From contig QPMI01000271.1 in assembly GCA_004431415.1 (NCBI GenBank), positions 45,659-109,658 of the forward strand: a DNA stretch of 64,000 nucleotides, in the 5' to 3' direction. The position numbers and the translations under genes were made by a program. How positions within the stretch are numbered: the first letter of the stretch is position 1; each line of letters starts with the position of its first letter. This document shows, in pieces, positions 44,924-55,222 of this stretch. Below the pieces are notes generated by a model. That model was not told where the DNA came from and did no database searches. It saw only the letters and a list, made by a program, of their open reading frames with translations. This DNA comes from Cyanophora paradoxa CCMP329. Its lineage: Eukaryota; Plantae; Glaucophyta.

Positions 44924-45395
44924 GCTTCGAATTCTGAGCCTCGGCTTTGGAGGGCTGCGAGGCCGCGGCCGCCGTCTTTGCGTTCACGCCCACAAGCACT
45001 GCTCCCGGCCGCGGCACGTGCGCTGCGCTGTGCATTGGGCCGTCTCGCGCGAATTGCGTTCCTATGCCTCGTCCGAAGTCGACTTTCGCTTATGTGCAAC
45101 ATTGTTTTTTTTTAATTCGAATAGCACCATGCCATGATGCATATGGCTTAACTCAATGAGCTTGCCAAGTTGAAGCTCGAGCTCGAGATGCCGCGCGCGC
45201 CAGCGCGTGTTCGAATTCAGTGCACGTGCGCGGTACCGGTCATGATCAGTGTGTCACACTGCAGCTGTGACAGTCACTGAGTGCACGTGTGCGTATGCAG
45301 CGTGCATGCGCACTGATCATGACGCACGGCGCGCGCAGCTAGCGACGCAGCGATATCGATTTCCCGCGGAGAATCCGCCAGGATTCCGCCGGACC

Positions 45396-50006: not shown

Positions 50007-50863
50007 ACCCGCAGCTTACAGCCGTCCATTCGTTCGGATATGCGCGCGCATCGATAGGACGCGTGGGGGCGGACTAGTGCTAGCGCTCGCTGCGGACTAC
50101 GCGCAAATATACGCATGCGCAAGAGCTCAGCTGCTGCATATGCGCTGCGGACTAGCGCTGCGGAGGGTGCTGGGGAGCCCTTGAGGCTGGGGAGGGACAT
50201 CGACGCTCAACGCATGGGAAGCCCGTCCTCCCGCCCCCGCGCCCGCGCCCGCGCCGCGGCGCCCCGGCCGTGCCGGGGCGGCGCGCCTTCATCATGCGCG
50301 CGGCGAGCCTCGGAGGGTCCCGCGGCCGATTGCCGCCGCGGCCTGGCCATGGCGAGTCGACGTCGATCCTTCTGCGTCGACGTCGTAGCGGCGCCGGCGG
50401 GCCGCCGGCTTGCTACTTAAAAGTTGCTACCAGCGCTAGCTAGCTCGGATTTCCTCCGGATCTCGAGTTGCCTCTACCCCCATCGAGATCTCGAGAAAAA
50501 CGAGCAATGCGCGAGCGCTAGCGCTGAAAACCTGATCGACGAACTGCAAGGTCCACCACGCAACGCCGCGTCCACCAGAGGCCGCAAAGCAAAGAGCAAA
50601 GAGCGTGTCTTAAGCAGCAGCCGCAGCAAATAACCGACCGCATTCGCGATCCGCACGAGGGCGCTTTCGACACGAGTCGGAGCGGGACACCAATTTTTGC
50701 AACAACTGACGACGCAAGATTCTGCTGGAGAGCTGTGACATCAGAGCAGCGTCCAGCAGCGAGGAGAGAGCCAGCGCCAGCGCAGTGAGACATGACTTTC
50801 TAGGTTCGTTTCGAATGACGTCCCTCTCCCGCCTTCTGTGCCAGAGGGCCATCCTCTGCCTAG

Positions 50864-50930
50864 TTCTTGAGCTAGATGAGCGTCCTACGACGACGTATGC
50901 TTCTTGAGCTAGATGAGCGTCCTACGACGA
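50864..50930. repeat. 30-bp perfect direct duplication with a 7-bp spacer
   Basis: TTCTTGAGCTAGATGAGCGTCCTACGACGA at 50864-50893 and 50901-50930. Confidence 0.95.
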
Positions 50931-51024
50931 TGAGGACGAGACCGCATCGAGTTCCACAGGGGCAGCAGCTGCGACCCAGCCGAAACCAGGTGGACCCCTT
51001 GGAGTAGCAGCTGCGAGTGGGACC

Positions 51025-54000
51025 ATGCGCAGCGCTTCAGCCGCGCATACATCAGATGGAGCTCGGTGCGTCGTGTCTTCGTCCCTGGAGATCACAATCT
51101 TTCTTTTCTTGAGCATTATAGGATCGCCGCGCGGCAATGCGGCTCTCAAACAGCAATTTCATGCCATCGTGTTTCTGAATCTCCTTCGCGGTCTTGACGC
51201 GCCTCGCAGGACTAGTTCGGGGTCGGGGGCGGGACCCTCGGGCGTGTCAGCGCAACCGGGAGCAACGGCGGTGCCTGGAGCTATCCTCGTTCAGTTCCCA
51301 ACGGGCATAAGCGGCCCCGGAAGAGGAGTTCCTGGGCCGTCGGCAGCGGCGCCGGCCAACCAGACGTCACCGGCGGGAGGGCAGGGGCCCGGTTCGCTCC
51401 TGGGGCCGGCGAGGGTGGCGCACCCCGGGGCGGCGGCCTCTCCCTCGTCTCCGGCAGCGGGCCAGTCGCACGGGCAGCCTGTCGGCCACAGGGCGACGCC
51501 GTCGGGCGCCCAGGCGGGGGCGGCCCACGGGGGCCAGCCCCCCGCCGGCGGGCAGGCGGCCGCGACCTCGCCGTCGATGCAGCCGCAGGCGGCGGCGCAG
51601 CTGTCGCCGCAGGGGCTCCATCCGAGCGCCCCGCAGGGCGCCAAGCAGCGCTCGCCGGCGCTCCAGCCCGCGATGCACGCCGCCGGCGCCCCGATGCCGG
51701 CGCCGAGCGGGCGGCTGCCGCCGCAGCCGCCGCGGCAGGTCTCGCCGCAAGTCTCGCCGCGCATGACGGCCTCGTCCTTCGCCGTCCCAGCCGCGCCCAG
51801 CACCTCCGCCGTCGCCCGCGGTGCGCGCCGCCCGCCCGCCCCGGGGCCTCGGCGGTGGCGTGACGGGGCGGGCGGCAGCGCGGGCGGTGGAGCGGGGGAG
51901 CCCGTCGCTGGACTCGCCGGAGAGCGCGGTGGAGGACATGGAGGAGGAGCTCGTGCGGCGTCCCCCGCCGCCGCCCCCGCCGCCGCCCCGCGGGCTCACG
52001 CAGGGCGCGCAGCTCATCCCCAAGATCGAGCCCTCGGAGGGCCCCGCCCCGGGCTCCCTCAGGTCCCGCCCCCGCACCCGAGCCTGCCGCCCCGTCGCCA
52101 GCGCCGACGCGGCGGGCGGCAGCGAGCGGGAGGTTGAGGGACACGCCCCCGGGGGCCCCGCGCACGCCTCTCCCGCCCCGCGCCAGCCCGGCGGCAAGTC
52201 GGCCCTCGCAGTGGTCACCGGGACCGTGATCTCCTCCTCCCCGGTCTCCTTCCCGGGGGCGGCGAGCAGCCCGTCGACGCCCGTCGGCTCCCCGCTGGGC
52301 CCGAGCGCGCTCGAGTCGAGCGAGAGCAGCCCGGCGGGGGAGGGCCGCACCGACAAGCGCCGCCGCGACTCCCACAACGAGTTCGAGCGCCGCCGCCGCG
52401 ACCAGATCAACTCCAAGGCGCGCCCCGCCGCGCCGCCGCGCGCCGCCCGGGGGGTGGCTGAGGGTGGGACGGGGCAGCTGGCGGAGCTGAAGCACCTGGT
52501 GCCGTCCCTCTCGAACCTCGTCTCCAACAAGGCCACCGTCCTCTCCAAGGCCATCGACTACATCGCCCAGGCCCGCCCCCGCCCCCCGCACCCGCCCCCG
52601 CCCCCCGCCGAGGCGGCGCGCCGGGGGGCAGCTCTCGAACGAGAACACGCGGGCGAACTACCACATCCACCAGCTCTCAGCGGAGAACTCGAAGGCGATC
52701 GACGTGATCAACCAGCTCAACGACGAGAACTCCGAGCTCCGCGCCCAGATCGACACCCTCCGCGTCAACCTCTCCCAGCAGGCCCGTTCCCGCACCCCGC
52801 GCCCCGCCCCCCGCCCCGCACCCCTCACCGCCCGCGCAGCAGCAGAAGCACTCCGCGGCGGCGGCAGCGGCGGCGGTGGGGACGGCGGCGGCGGCGGGGG
52901 AGGGGCGGGAGGGGGGCGGGGGCGGGAAGCGTGCGCGGCGGGATGCGGGGGAGCAGCGGTCGTGCGTGCCGGACGAGGTCCTCAAGCAGTTCGTCGCGTC
53001 GACGCTGGCCCTCACCACGCGTTCCCTCGTCGTGTGCGACGCGACGCACCCCTCCTTCCCCATCATCTACGCCTCCCTCGGCTTCCAGCGTCCGCCCCGC
53101 CCCGCCCCGCCCCGCCCCGCCCGCCTCGCCGACGCTGGGGCCGCAGTGATGACGGGGTACGCGCAAGAGGAGGTGCTGGGGCGCAACTGCAACTTCCTGC
53201 AGGGGCGCAACACCTCGCCCCTGACCCGCAACGTCGTCCGCAACGCGCTGCGGGACAAGCAGGAGGTGCTCGTGGAGATCCTCAACTACAAGAAGGACGG
53301 CACGCCCTTCTGGAACCTCCTCTTCATCACGTGCGCCGCCCCCGCCGCCGGGGCTGGCGGGGGCCTGAGGCGGAGGGGCAGGCCGGTGCTGGACAGCTTC
53401 GGGCAGGCGATCTACTACATGGGCCTCCAGTTCGACATCACGGAGACCAAGTGCGTCTCCAAGGAGCAGCCGGCCCGCCTCGCCGAGTACCAGCACAACC
53501 CGTGCCCCCGCCCCGCCCCGCCCCCGCCCGCTCGAGCCTGAGCTTGCGCGGCGCAGGCGCGTGGAGACGGTGCCCGGGGAGGCGTCGGTGCTGTACGTGC
53601 CGAACGAGACGCTGAAGCACCTGATCGCAAGCGCGCTGCGGCTCATCATGCGCAACATCGCCATCACCGACCCCAAGCAGTCCGGCAACCCCATCATCTA
53701 CTGCACCCCGGGCCTCTGCCAGGCCCGCCCCCCGCCCCGCCCCGCCCCGCCCCTCGCGCCCCCGCCGAGGCGGGCGCAGATGACGGGGTACAGCAAGGAG
53801 GAGATCCTGGGGCGGAACGGCGGCTTCCTGCAGGGGCCGGGCTCGGACCCCGTCACGCGCTCGCAGATCGGCAAGGCGCTCCGCGAGTGCCGCGAGTGCC
53901 TCGCCGAGATGCTCAACTACAAGAAGGACGGCACGCCCTTCTGGAACCTCATGTTCATCACGTGCGCGCGGGCCGCGGCGGGCTGGTGGCTGGGGCCGGG

Positions 54001-54165
54001 GGCGAGGGGGCGGGGCCGGGGCGCAGGCCGGTGCTGGACACGTACGGGAAGCCGATGCTCTTCATCGGCGTCGAGTACGACATCACCGCCGTCCGCCCCG
54101 CCCCGCCCCGCCCCGCCCCCGCCCCCGGCCCGCCCCCGCTCACCCTCGCCACCCCGCAGAGGTAG
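51025..54165 (+). CDS. bHLH-leucine zipper-LOV-LOV protein; putative blue-light-sensing transcription factor (start codon uncertain)
   Basis: bHLH RRRDSHNEFERRRRDQINSK|LAELKHLVP...NKATVLSKAIDYI, then a ~7-heptad zipper. LOV1: PIIYASLGF..MTGY..EVLGRNCNFLQG...NYKKDGTPFWN...GLQFD. LOV2: PIIY..MTGY..EILGRNGGFLQG...NYKKDGTPFWN...GVEYD. Exons from the bHLH to the stop join in frame using GT/GC-AG introns. Confidence 0.88.
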
Positions 54166-55222
54166 CCCCCGCCCCGCCGCGGCCGGCGCCACGCTACCAG
54201 CCGGCGGCGCCCTCGTCCTGAAACCCAACTTTCCCGCTTTTGGAGTCGCCCCGGGGCCCGCTGCCCTGCATGCTTGAGAGAGACTTTTTCCCCACCAGAG
54301 GTCGGTCACTGAGACACGGAGTTTCAAAACGAATAGTTTTCAAGCTGCATAGTTTGCGTGTGATCGCATAGTGGAGGATGTCCCCTGATTTCTTGTTCGT
54401 TCACTTGTACGTACCACTTCAGTCTACTTTAAAAGTTTCGCGCAGTCCCTAGTTCGTACAGTCCCGATTCGGGAAGCGCAGTCCTTAGTTTAGCCTTGAT
54501 GCAGTGTCTCGGTGAGCCCGTGTGTACTTCGTGTATAGCACCCACTCGATCCCGGCTTGCCAAGTTGACAGAATTCGATGAGAGAATTTCAAGCAGTTTT
54601 CTTGCCCAGCCCCCCCCCCCCCCCCCCGCCCGCCCCCCGCCCCCTTCCGCTGCGCATGCCTCTCCCTGCATGGAGGCGGCCCATATGTGACTCCCCATTC
54701 CCTGCGGAACTCATGATCACTGCGCATATGAATGCATGTCACACGGGGAACAGTACCAGTCCCTGATCATGAGTCACACTGAGCCCCAGATCTAGACCTC
54801 TTGGACTCCGGGAACCAGAACTCGGAACTTCGGAACTGTACCCGCGGGCCCGGGGCGGATCCGGACTCGGGAGACCCACTGGCATGGCATGGGCCACTAG
54901 TACTGGCCGGGCCATGGGCAACAACCGTGAACAACATCAAGGAGTTTCACATGTACATCATGGCATCGCCCACCGTTTCAAACTGAACGGAGTTTGCGTC
55001 ACGCCCCGCCCATTGTTAACTTCTTCCGCCAATGAAATTAGCCCAGCGCAAACTTGAGCTCGAACTTGGCCTCGTACACAGTGGCGTACACACGCGGCCA
55101 CAACGGTCACAGTAACGGTCAGCAGGCCGGCTTGCTAGTCAGCTTCCCTCGGCTAGGCCGGACTAGCTAGCTTCCCGCCATCGCGCACGCCCGAGCGCGA
55201 GCATTCCTGCACGCCGCCGTGC

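What the first reader, a model, noticed from the sequence alone, without database searches (positions are those of the whole stretch)
51025..54165. bHLH-ZIP-LOV-LOV: candidate single-chain blue-light-controlled E-box transcription factor
Seen: hand splicing joins a P/Q/S-rich N-terminus, a Myc/Max/USF-type bHLH (basic region with H-E-R), a ~7-heptad zipper and two LOV domains in one frame. The zipper-to-LOV1 junction is a phase-0 GC-AG intron at ~52781-52838. LOV1 keeps the adduct-forming Cys (GRNCNFLQG), both Asn of NYKKDG/FWN and the signalling Gln (GLQ). Established: H-E-R bHLHs bind CACGTG. The well-known LOV transcription factors are aureochrome (bZIP-LOV), White Collar-1 (LOV-PAS-GATA) and EL222 (LOV-HTH), while clock-type bHLH-PAS proteins carry non-LOV PAS domains. 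Inference: this is an independently assembled aureochrome analogue in a probable glaucophyte, and a possible optogenetic scaffold. I cannot exclude that the architecture already appears in a transcriptome survey.
Basis: partly seen in the sequence, partly recalled or inferred. Interest (0 to 1): 0.92.

Follow-up and report, generated by a model that had tools for sequence, protein, structure and literature searches.

The report
Glaucophyte bHLH-zipper blue-light transcription factor
This is a real, transcribed gene of the alga Cyanophora paradoxa that joins an E-box-type DNA-binding module to two LOV flavin domains, only one of which looks light-reactive; it belongs to a glaucophyte-wide family that sequence databases already list but for which I found no study.

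Summary
Confirmed. Fourteen exons (51025-54165) encode 761 aa, identical to C. paradoxa model tig00001154_g7305.t1: bHLH (His-Glu-Arg, nearest solved relative USF2), seven-heptad zipper, two LOV domains. RNA contigs support 12 of 13 introns; the zipper-to-LOV1 intron (52782-52839) is not shown, but an intron-free Gloeochaete transcript carries the whole architecture in one frame. Orthologues are 83-94% identical per domain (zipper 63-84%).

Corrections: LOV2 lacks the adduct cysteine and usually the signalling glutamine (Gly, Glu); LOV1 lacks one phosphate-binding arginine. The architecture is not unseen: glaucophyte homologues are in GenBank as 'putative LOV domain-containing protein'. They form three paralogue classes with different LOV pairs and zipper lengths. 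I found none outside glaucophytes and no paper describing them; the paper that probably deposited them was unavailable. The scan noted paralogues on other pieces of this genome.

Best reading (0.6): a dimeric CACGTG-binding factor tuned by blue light through LOV1, working like an aureochrome but not one. Main rival (0.25): the light-blind partner of photoactive paralogues. No photochemistry or DNA binding has been shown.

The parts
50504..51024 (+). Transcribed 5' leader (about 520 nt) with seven upstream ATGs and a 38-nt tandem duplication
   Evidence: RNA-like contigs begin at 50504-50559 and run into exon 1; uATG list; strand inferred from GT-AG orientation
51025..52357 (+). Low-complexity A/P/S/G-rich N-terminus, residues 1-337, exons 1-5; introns 51066-51209, 51821-51878, 51953-52012, 52063-52122; not conserved in orthologues; presumed activation or regulatory region
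   Evidence: Joints in three runs; composition; alignment
52358..52634 (+). bHLH, residues 338-389, with H343 (52373), E347 (52385), R351 (52397); GC-AG introns 52418-52477 and 52571-52631
   Evidence: Pfam HLH; best PDB relatives USF2, USF1, MITF, SREBP, Max; introns spliced
52562..52772 (+). Leucine zipper, residues 386-435, seven heptads with three a-position Asn; 21 residues longer than in paralogue classes B and C
52782..52839 (+). Phase-0 GC-AG intron joining zipper exon to LOV1 exon; acceptor followed by further CAG triplets
   Evidence: Frame check and identity with P0001; not displayed as an RNA joint; orthologue transcript continuous
52840..52974 (+). Flexible linker (29-48 aa in orthologues) with a conserved basic patch KRARR/KRPR at 52927-52941, a possible nuclear localisation signal
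   Evidence: NLS is inference
52975..53445 (+). A'alpha helix plus LOV1, residues 484-604: C536 (53188), N568, N578, Q599 kept; Arg after Cys replaced by Asn; extra Arg549; introns 53090-53146 and 53331-53381
   Evidence: closest PDB sequence Chlamydomonas phototropin LOV1, E 7e-31
53446..53605 (+). LOV1-LOV2 linker (39 aa from the end of LOV1 to the second A'alpha), no J-alpha helix predicted; intron 53502-53556
53606..54090 (+). A'alpha helix plus LOV2, residues 640-760: G692 (53819) for the adduct Cys, E755 (54073) for the signalling Gln, both phosphate-binding Arg replaced by Gly; introns 53723-53779 (GC-AG) and 53962-54026
   Evidence: LOV fold, Z 20.3 to 1n9l
54160..54596 (+). Last exon: one codon, stop at 54163-54165, and 3' UTR to about 54596; intron 54091-54159

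Best explanation
A nuclear bHLH-zipper transcription factor with a built-in blue-light sensor. Shown: one gene, one frame, the domain order, the residues, and strong conservation in three glaucophyte genera. Inferred: (1) it dimerises through helix-loop-helix plus the seven-heptad zipper, as a homodimer or with a paralogue; (2) the His-Glu-Arg basic region binds CACGTG; (3) LOV1 binds a flavin and forms the Cys536-C4a adduct in blue light, with Arg549 probably replacing the lost phosphate-binding Arg; (4) as neither LOV has a J-alpha helix and the chain ends two residues after LOV2, the signal leaves through the A'alpha helices and beta-sheet, re-arranging a LOV1-LOV2 pair in which the Cys-less LOV2 is the fixed partner; (5) this changes DNA affinity, partner choice or activation, by degree rather than on/off, as in aureochromes.
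For: Model identical to P0001; splicing; intron-free orthologue transcript with HLH and two PAS_9; identity to orthologues bHLH 88-94%, LOV1 84-85%, LOV2 86-87% while third-position GC differs 98% vs 50%; LOV1 Cys, both Asn and Gln invariant in all four class A proteins; fold closer to LOV (Z about 20) than to BMAL1/HIF PAS-B (Z about 13); tandem model pLDDT 83.5, pTM 0.78 with an A'alpha helix before each LOV; USF2 is the best solved relative over bHLH and zipper, E 2e-12. Aureochrome precedent for C-terminal LOV acting through A'alpha: PMC4937327.
Against: No biochemical data. LOV1 departs from consensus at the phosphate/ribityl end (Arg451->Asn/Ser, Asn425->Phe/Met, Val463->Arg in oat LOV2 numbering; 468 of 504 other LOV domains keep Arg451), so flavin binding may be weak. 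The zipper-LOV linker is variable in length and sequence (29-48 aa), so there is no rigid lever. A long zipper may dimerise without light. No CACGTG in this gene's own promoter. The full-length AlphaFold model failed (pLDDT 45).
Confidence: 0.6

Rival explanations
1. Light-blind common partner. Class A has turned both LOVs into dimerisation or small-ligand modules and serves as the constant partner (like Max, ARNT or aureochrome 2) of the photoactive paralogues B and C.
For: Class A is the only class with a non-canonical LOV1 motif and a Cys-less LOV2. Class B has Lys/Arg at a zipper a position, which by established coiled-coil rules disfavours homodimers. PtAUREO2 cannot bind flavin (PMC4937327).
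Against: Cys, both Asn and Gln of LOV1 are invariant across three genera, which is hard to explain without photochemistry; Arg549 is well placed to compensate (i-4 from Arg553, inference). The class A zipper is 21 residues longer than those of B and C, and its Ile/Asn pattern suits a homodimer.
Confidence: 0.25
2. Two-input sensor. LOV1 reads light by the adduct, while LOV2 binds flavin and signals through the neutral semiquinone, reading light or cell redox state. This can coexist with the best explanation.
For: LOV2 keeps both Asn, Gln454 and Asn449 and is as conserved as LOV1. An engineered Cys-less LOV with an acidic residue at the Gln site (AsLOV2 C450A:Q513D) photoreduces rapidly and still moves its helices (PMC9098866); natural Cys-less LOVs respond to reduction (PMC4682037). 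The same Gly+Glu pair occurs in bacterial sensor kinases and phosphatases (19 of 24 Gly domains), which the tree keeps apart from glaucophyte LOV2 (p-AU 0.011).
Against: LOV2 has lost both phosphate-binding Arg and Phe434; one Gloeochaete paralogue keeps Gln, so Glu is not required; the ligand of the bacterial Gly+Glu domains is unknown to me and may not be a flavin; the 19 domains come from 6 related proteins, so they are about one event.
Confidence: 0.15
3. Two neighbouring genes (a bHLH-ZIP and a double LOV) joined by hand splicing or by the gene predictor.
For: No Cyanophora RNA contig shown spans the zipper-LOV1 junction.
Against: Contigs break at a GGC-rich repeat just downstream; no stop or 3' UTR lies between; transcript-derived orthologues from two other genera have all domains in one frame.
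Confidence: 0.02

Closest known systems
Aureochromes (bZIP-LOV of stramenopiles, e.g. PtAUREO1a)
   Same: N-terminal low-complexity region, then basic DNA-binding dimer module, then C-terminal A'alpha-LOV; several paralogues, including degenerate ones
   Different: bHLH-ZIP instead of bZIP; predicted CACGTG rather than TGACGT; two LOVs; no J-alpha; primary-plastid lineage
USF/MITF/Max bHLH-ZIP factors
   Same: His-Glu-Arg basic region, HLH followed directly by a zipper; USF2 aligns over 94 residues
   Different: Those factors carry no sensor domain
bHLH-PAS factors (CLOCK, BMAL1, ARNT, HIF; diatom RITMO1)
   Same: bHLH followed by PAS-fold domains, two in tandem as in the animal proteins
   Different: A zipper lies between; the PAS domains are LOV-type by sequence and fold; bHLH is closer to USF than to BMAL1/CLOCK
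Phototropins
   Same: Tandem LOV1-LOV2; next-best sequence hits after the glaucophyte family
   Different: No kinase; glaucophyte LOVs group together, apart from phototropin LOV1 and LOV2; glaucophytes lack phototropin (PMC4532919)
Database entries 'putative LOV domain-containing protein' of Glaucocystis, Gloeochaete, Cyanoptyche and Cyanophora
   Same: The same family; AML78262.1, AML78280.1 and AML78281.1 are orthologues of this gene
   Different: Unnamed and, as far as I could find, untested; the three-class structure and the LOV2 degeneration are not stated in these records
White Collar-1 and EL222
   Same: LOV and DNA-binding domain in one chain (own knowledge)
   Different: LOV is N-terminal to a GATA finger or an HTH

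Membership tests
Aureochrome | bZIP DNA-binding domain | tested here: not met
   Pfam gives HLH, no bZIP on P0001
Aureochrome | Single C-terminal LOV with A'alpha and J-alpha | tested here: not met
   Two LOVs; A'alpha present, chain ends 2 residues after LOV2
Aureochrome | LOV descends from the aureochrome LOV clade | not tested
   No identified aureochrome among the tree rows
Group B bHLH-ZIP (USF/Max/MITF) | His5-Glu9-Arg13 basic region | tested here: met
   H343, E347, R351; same in all 10 family members with a basic region
Group B bHLH-ZIP (USF/Max/MITF) | Zipper continuing helix 2 | tested here: met
   Heptad table
Group B bHLH-ZIP (USF/Max/MITF) | Binds CACGTG as a dimer | not testable with these tools
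   Inferred from residues
Canonical LOV photoreceptor, LOV1 | Adduct Cys, two Asn, signalling Gln | tested here: met
   C536, N568, N578, Q599
Canonical LOV photoreceptor, LOV1 | Arg pair binding the FMN phosphate | tested here: inconclusive
   First Arg lost, second kept, a new Arg one turn before it
Canonical LOV photoreceptor, LOV1 | Flavin binding and photocycle | not testable with these tools
   Needs purified protein
Canonical LOV photoreceptor, LOV2 | Adduct Cys and signalling Gln | tested here: not met
   Gly/Ala at the Cys site in 4 of 4; Glu at the Gln site in 3 of 4
Animal/diatom bHLH-PAS | bHLH directly followed by non-LOV PAS | tested here: not met
   Zipper between; LOV-type fold Z about 20 vs about 13
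Phototropin | C-terminal Ser/Thr kinase | tested here: not met
   No kinase; stop at 54163-54165 followed by 3' UTR

The most novel reading that the evidence does not exclude
Glaucophytes run a Myc/Max- or CLOCK/BMAL-like network of three bHLH-ZIP-LOV-LOV paralogues that pair through their zippers, each bringing a different sensor set (adduct + adduct, adduct + degenerate PAS, adduct + semiquinone-type LOV). This gene would be a natural light-plus-redox integrator, and the network a main blue-light or clock input in a primary-plastid lineage that has no phototropin.
Probability: 0.15. Interest if true: 0.92.

Novelty: new variant of a known kind. Interest (0 to 1): 0.72.

Why it matters
Glaucophytes lack phototropins (PMC4532919), and two recent reviews of algal photoreceptors do not mention an HLH-LOV protein (PMC12558739, PMC13436692). 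A 2021 survey called LOV plus DNA-binding domain an innovation apparently restricted to secondary-plastid algae, while itself reporting a possible green-algal LOV-WRKY (PMC8017926). This family is a genome- and transcript-backed case in a primary-plastid lineage and names concrete candidates for its blue-light sensing. It would be a further independent fusion of LOV to a DNA-binding domain and a natural light-gated E-box binder, of use for optogenetics. LOV2 naturally carries a Cys-less, acid-for-Gln pocket like one engineered in the laboratory.

Tried and rejected
Metagenome contig scan with the class A alignment: no relative. Region searches with class A and class B bHLH: glaucophyte hits only; these searches are word-based and length-limited, so absence elsewhere is not proven. 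A bHLH profile over the 264 proteins held at that point hit only family members. ESM Atlas: nearest clusters are aureochrome-like, diatom bHLH-PAS and phototropin, none with this architecture. Full-length fold failed for want of alignment depth. Foldseek and VIA-align match single LOVs well but no solved tandem arrangement. No Rfam hit around the gene; no Pfam hit in seven flanking raw ORFs. Autoregulation by a canonical E-box rejected for this gene: no CACGTG between 45290 and 53327. The 'goes back 580' joint is not a circular RNA: LOV1 and LOV2 share 39 identical bases, and piece lengths fit normal splicing. Literature: no hit for bHLH-LOV, HLH-LOV and variants; the 2016 LOV survey that I recall as the source of the AML accessions (Glantz et al.) is not held, so I could not see whether it lists this architecture; it may well do. 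The careful tree did not finish; quick trees are quoted.

Full report
Observation. The region 51025-54165 is a GC-rich eukaryotic gene with short introns. A local frame check over 14 exons gives 761 codons with one stop, and the product is identical to P0001, the EukProt Cyanophora paradoxa model tig00001154_g7305.t1. The organism is thus a glaucophyte. Method note: I did not send my own joined model to any search. Window searches used stop-free stretches by reference; the joined chain was built only inside scripts to check frame and coordinates; later searches and folds used the database's own protein ids, P0001 among them.

Transcription. Three runs from three studies show joints that match introns 1-6 and 9 exactly, while a fourth, DNA-like run is continuous across introns. 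Introns 8 and 10-13 follow from the lengths of contig pieces. Intron 7 (52782-52839), the one that joins zipper to LOV1, is not displayed: one contig ends at the exon end, one has 3 and one 44 unlisted letters after it, and a GGC-rich repeat follows. The single chain is supported instead by orthologues: a 2724-nt Gloeochaete contig encodes HLH and two PAS_9 domains in one intron-free frame, as does the Glaucocystis protein. Four of the 13 introns are GC-AG.

Anatomy. Residues 1-337 are A/P/S/G-rich and not conserved. The bHLH (Pfam E 5e-14) has His5, Glu9 and Arg13, which by established knowledge mark CACGTG binders; its best solved relatives are USF2, USF1, MITF, SREBP and Max, ahead of BMAL1 and CLOCK. 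Helix 2 runs into seven heptads with Ile/Asn alternating at a and Leu/Ala at d, the same in all four class A proteins. After a variable linker come two copies of an A'alpha helix plus LOV, 52% identical to each other, with one intron at the same codon position in both and a second two bases apart. AlphaFold models the tandem at pLDDT 83.5 and pTM 0.78 from 14 sequences; the pTM suggests a defined LOV1-LOV2 packing, but I could not inspect coordinates. There is no J-alpha helix after either LOV.

Flavin pocket (oat phototropin LOV2 numbering, from my own knowledge, mapped through a profile). LOV1 keeps Asn449, Cys450, Gln454, Arg467, Asn482, Asn492 and Gln513, but has Asn/Ser at 451, Arg at 463 and Phe/Met at 425. 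Among 504 other LOV domains fetched, 468 keep Arg451 and 15 have a basic residue at 463. The loss at 451 and gain at 463 are shared by class A LOV1 and LOV2 and may be compensatory (inference). LOV2 has Gly/Ala450, Gly451, Gly467, a small residue at 434 and Glu513 (Gln in one Gloeochaete paralogue). It cannot form the adduct, yet it is 86-87% identical between genera, so it is under selection for something.

Family. Searches returned glaucophyte proteins with HLH plus PAS_9, in three classes. A (this gene; Cyanophora, Glaucocystis, two in Gloeochaete). B (both LOVs with the canonical motif; the same three genera, the Cyanophora entries being partial). C (canonical LOV1 plus a degenerate PAS; four genera including Cyanoptyche). 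B and C zippers are 21 residues shorter, and B has Lys/Arg at one a position. In quick trees all 19 glaucophyte LOVs form one group apart from phototropin LOV1 and LOV2 (SH-aLRT 94 and 82), which fits a lineage-specific duplication but is only moderately supported; class C second domains were left out as long branches, seven further long rows were dropped from the second tree, and no aureochrome was identified among the rows. No member outside glaucophytes was found.

A side result: bacterial multi-PAS histidine kinases and SpoIIE phosphatases carry LOV-like domains with the same Gly450 + Glu513 pair (19 of 24 Gly450 domains, 6 proteins). The data reject their grouping with glaucophyte LOV2 (p-AU 0.011), so the pair probably arose twice. 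A Cys-less LOV with Asp at 513 photoreduces readily and still signals (PMC9098866), while charged residues at this site are rare in natural Gln-less LOVs.

Mechanism. Most likely (0.6) a dimeric E-box factor whose output is tuned by a Cys adduct in LOV1, relayed through A'alpha and the LOV1-LOV2 interface. In aureochromes the light effect on DNA affinity is reported as about 2-fold or 10-fold, depending on the study (PMC4937327), so a graded effect is expected. Rivals: light-blind partner of classes B and C (0.25); additional semiquinone or redox input through LOV2 (0.15, compatible with the first); mis-joined genes (0.02). None of the photochemical or DNA-binding steps is shown.

Novelty. It works like an aureochrome but is not one. 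The sequences have been public under generic names, with HLH and PAS_9 recognisable by Pfam, so the architecture is catalogued, not unseen. I found no paper that names or tests it, but the probable depositing survey could not be read, and one preprint lists 'HTH and HLH' among LOV effectors without detail. Verdict: real, conserved, uncharacterised; new variant of a known kind; interest 0.72. Earlier notes of this scan on paralogues and on the LOV asymmetry agree, but are not counted as evidence.

Noticed in passing
window 50804-50930: Two RNA-like runs (X1, X5) have 109 other letters in place of these 125, while X15 and X16 match the window, which here holds a 38-nt tandem duplication: a strain or allele difference in the 5' leader. 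The frame upstream of ATG 51025 is open back to 50917 and looks protein-like, so the start may differ between strains.
   Followed up: partly
window 50504-51024: Seven upstream ATGs, giving uORFs of 3-43 codons in the transcribed leader; possible translational control.
   Followed up: no
window 52837-52845: Three CAG in a row at the acceptor of intron 7; two RNA contigs end at or 3 nt after the upstream exon, which would fit alternative acceptors changing the Gln run.
   Followed up: partly
P0129, P0170, P0174, P0180, P0203, P0255; L002 5001-7052: Bacterial sensor kinases and SpoIIE phosphatases with repeated Cys-less LOV-like domains carrying Gly at the Cys site and Glu at the Gln site; ligand unknown to me; L002 neighbours (Por secretion tail) suggest Bacteroidota.
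   Followed up: partly
P0008, P0128, P0009/P0268 (class B paralogues): Two canonical LOV motifs and a basic residue at a zipper a position: probably the best photoreceptor and optogenetic candidates of the family, and likely heterodimer-formers.
   Followed up: partly
window 45015-45289: Three CACGTG within 275 nt, two as GTGCACGTG; overall count in the window (14) is within chance.
   Followed up: no
window 53281-53319 and 53912-53950: 39 identical bases between LOV1 and LOV2 exons, explicable by identical residues plus 98% third-position GC; causes a false backward joint in contigs.
   Followed up: yes
window 50200-50459: A separate transcribed contig ends about 45 nt before this gene's leader begins; neighbour gene not identified.
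   Followed up: no
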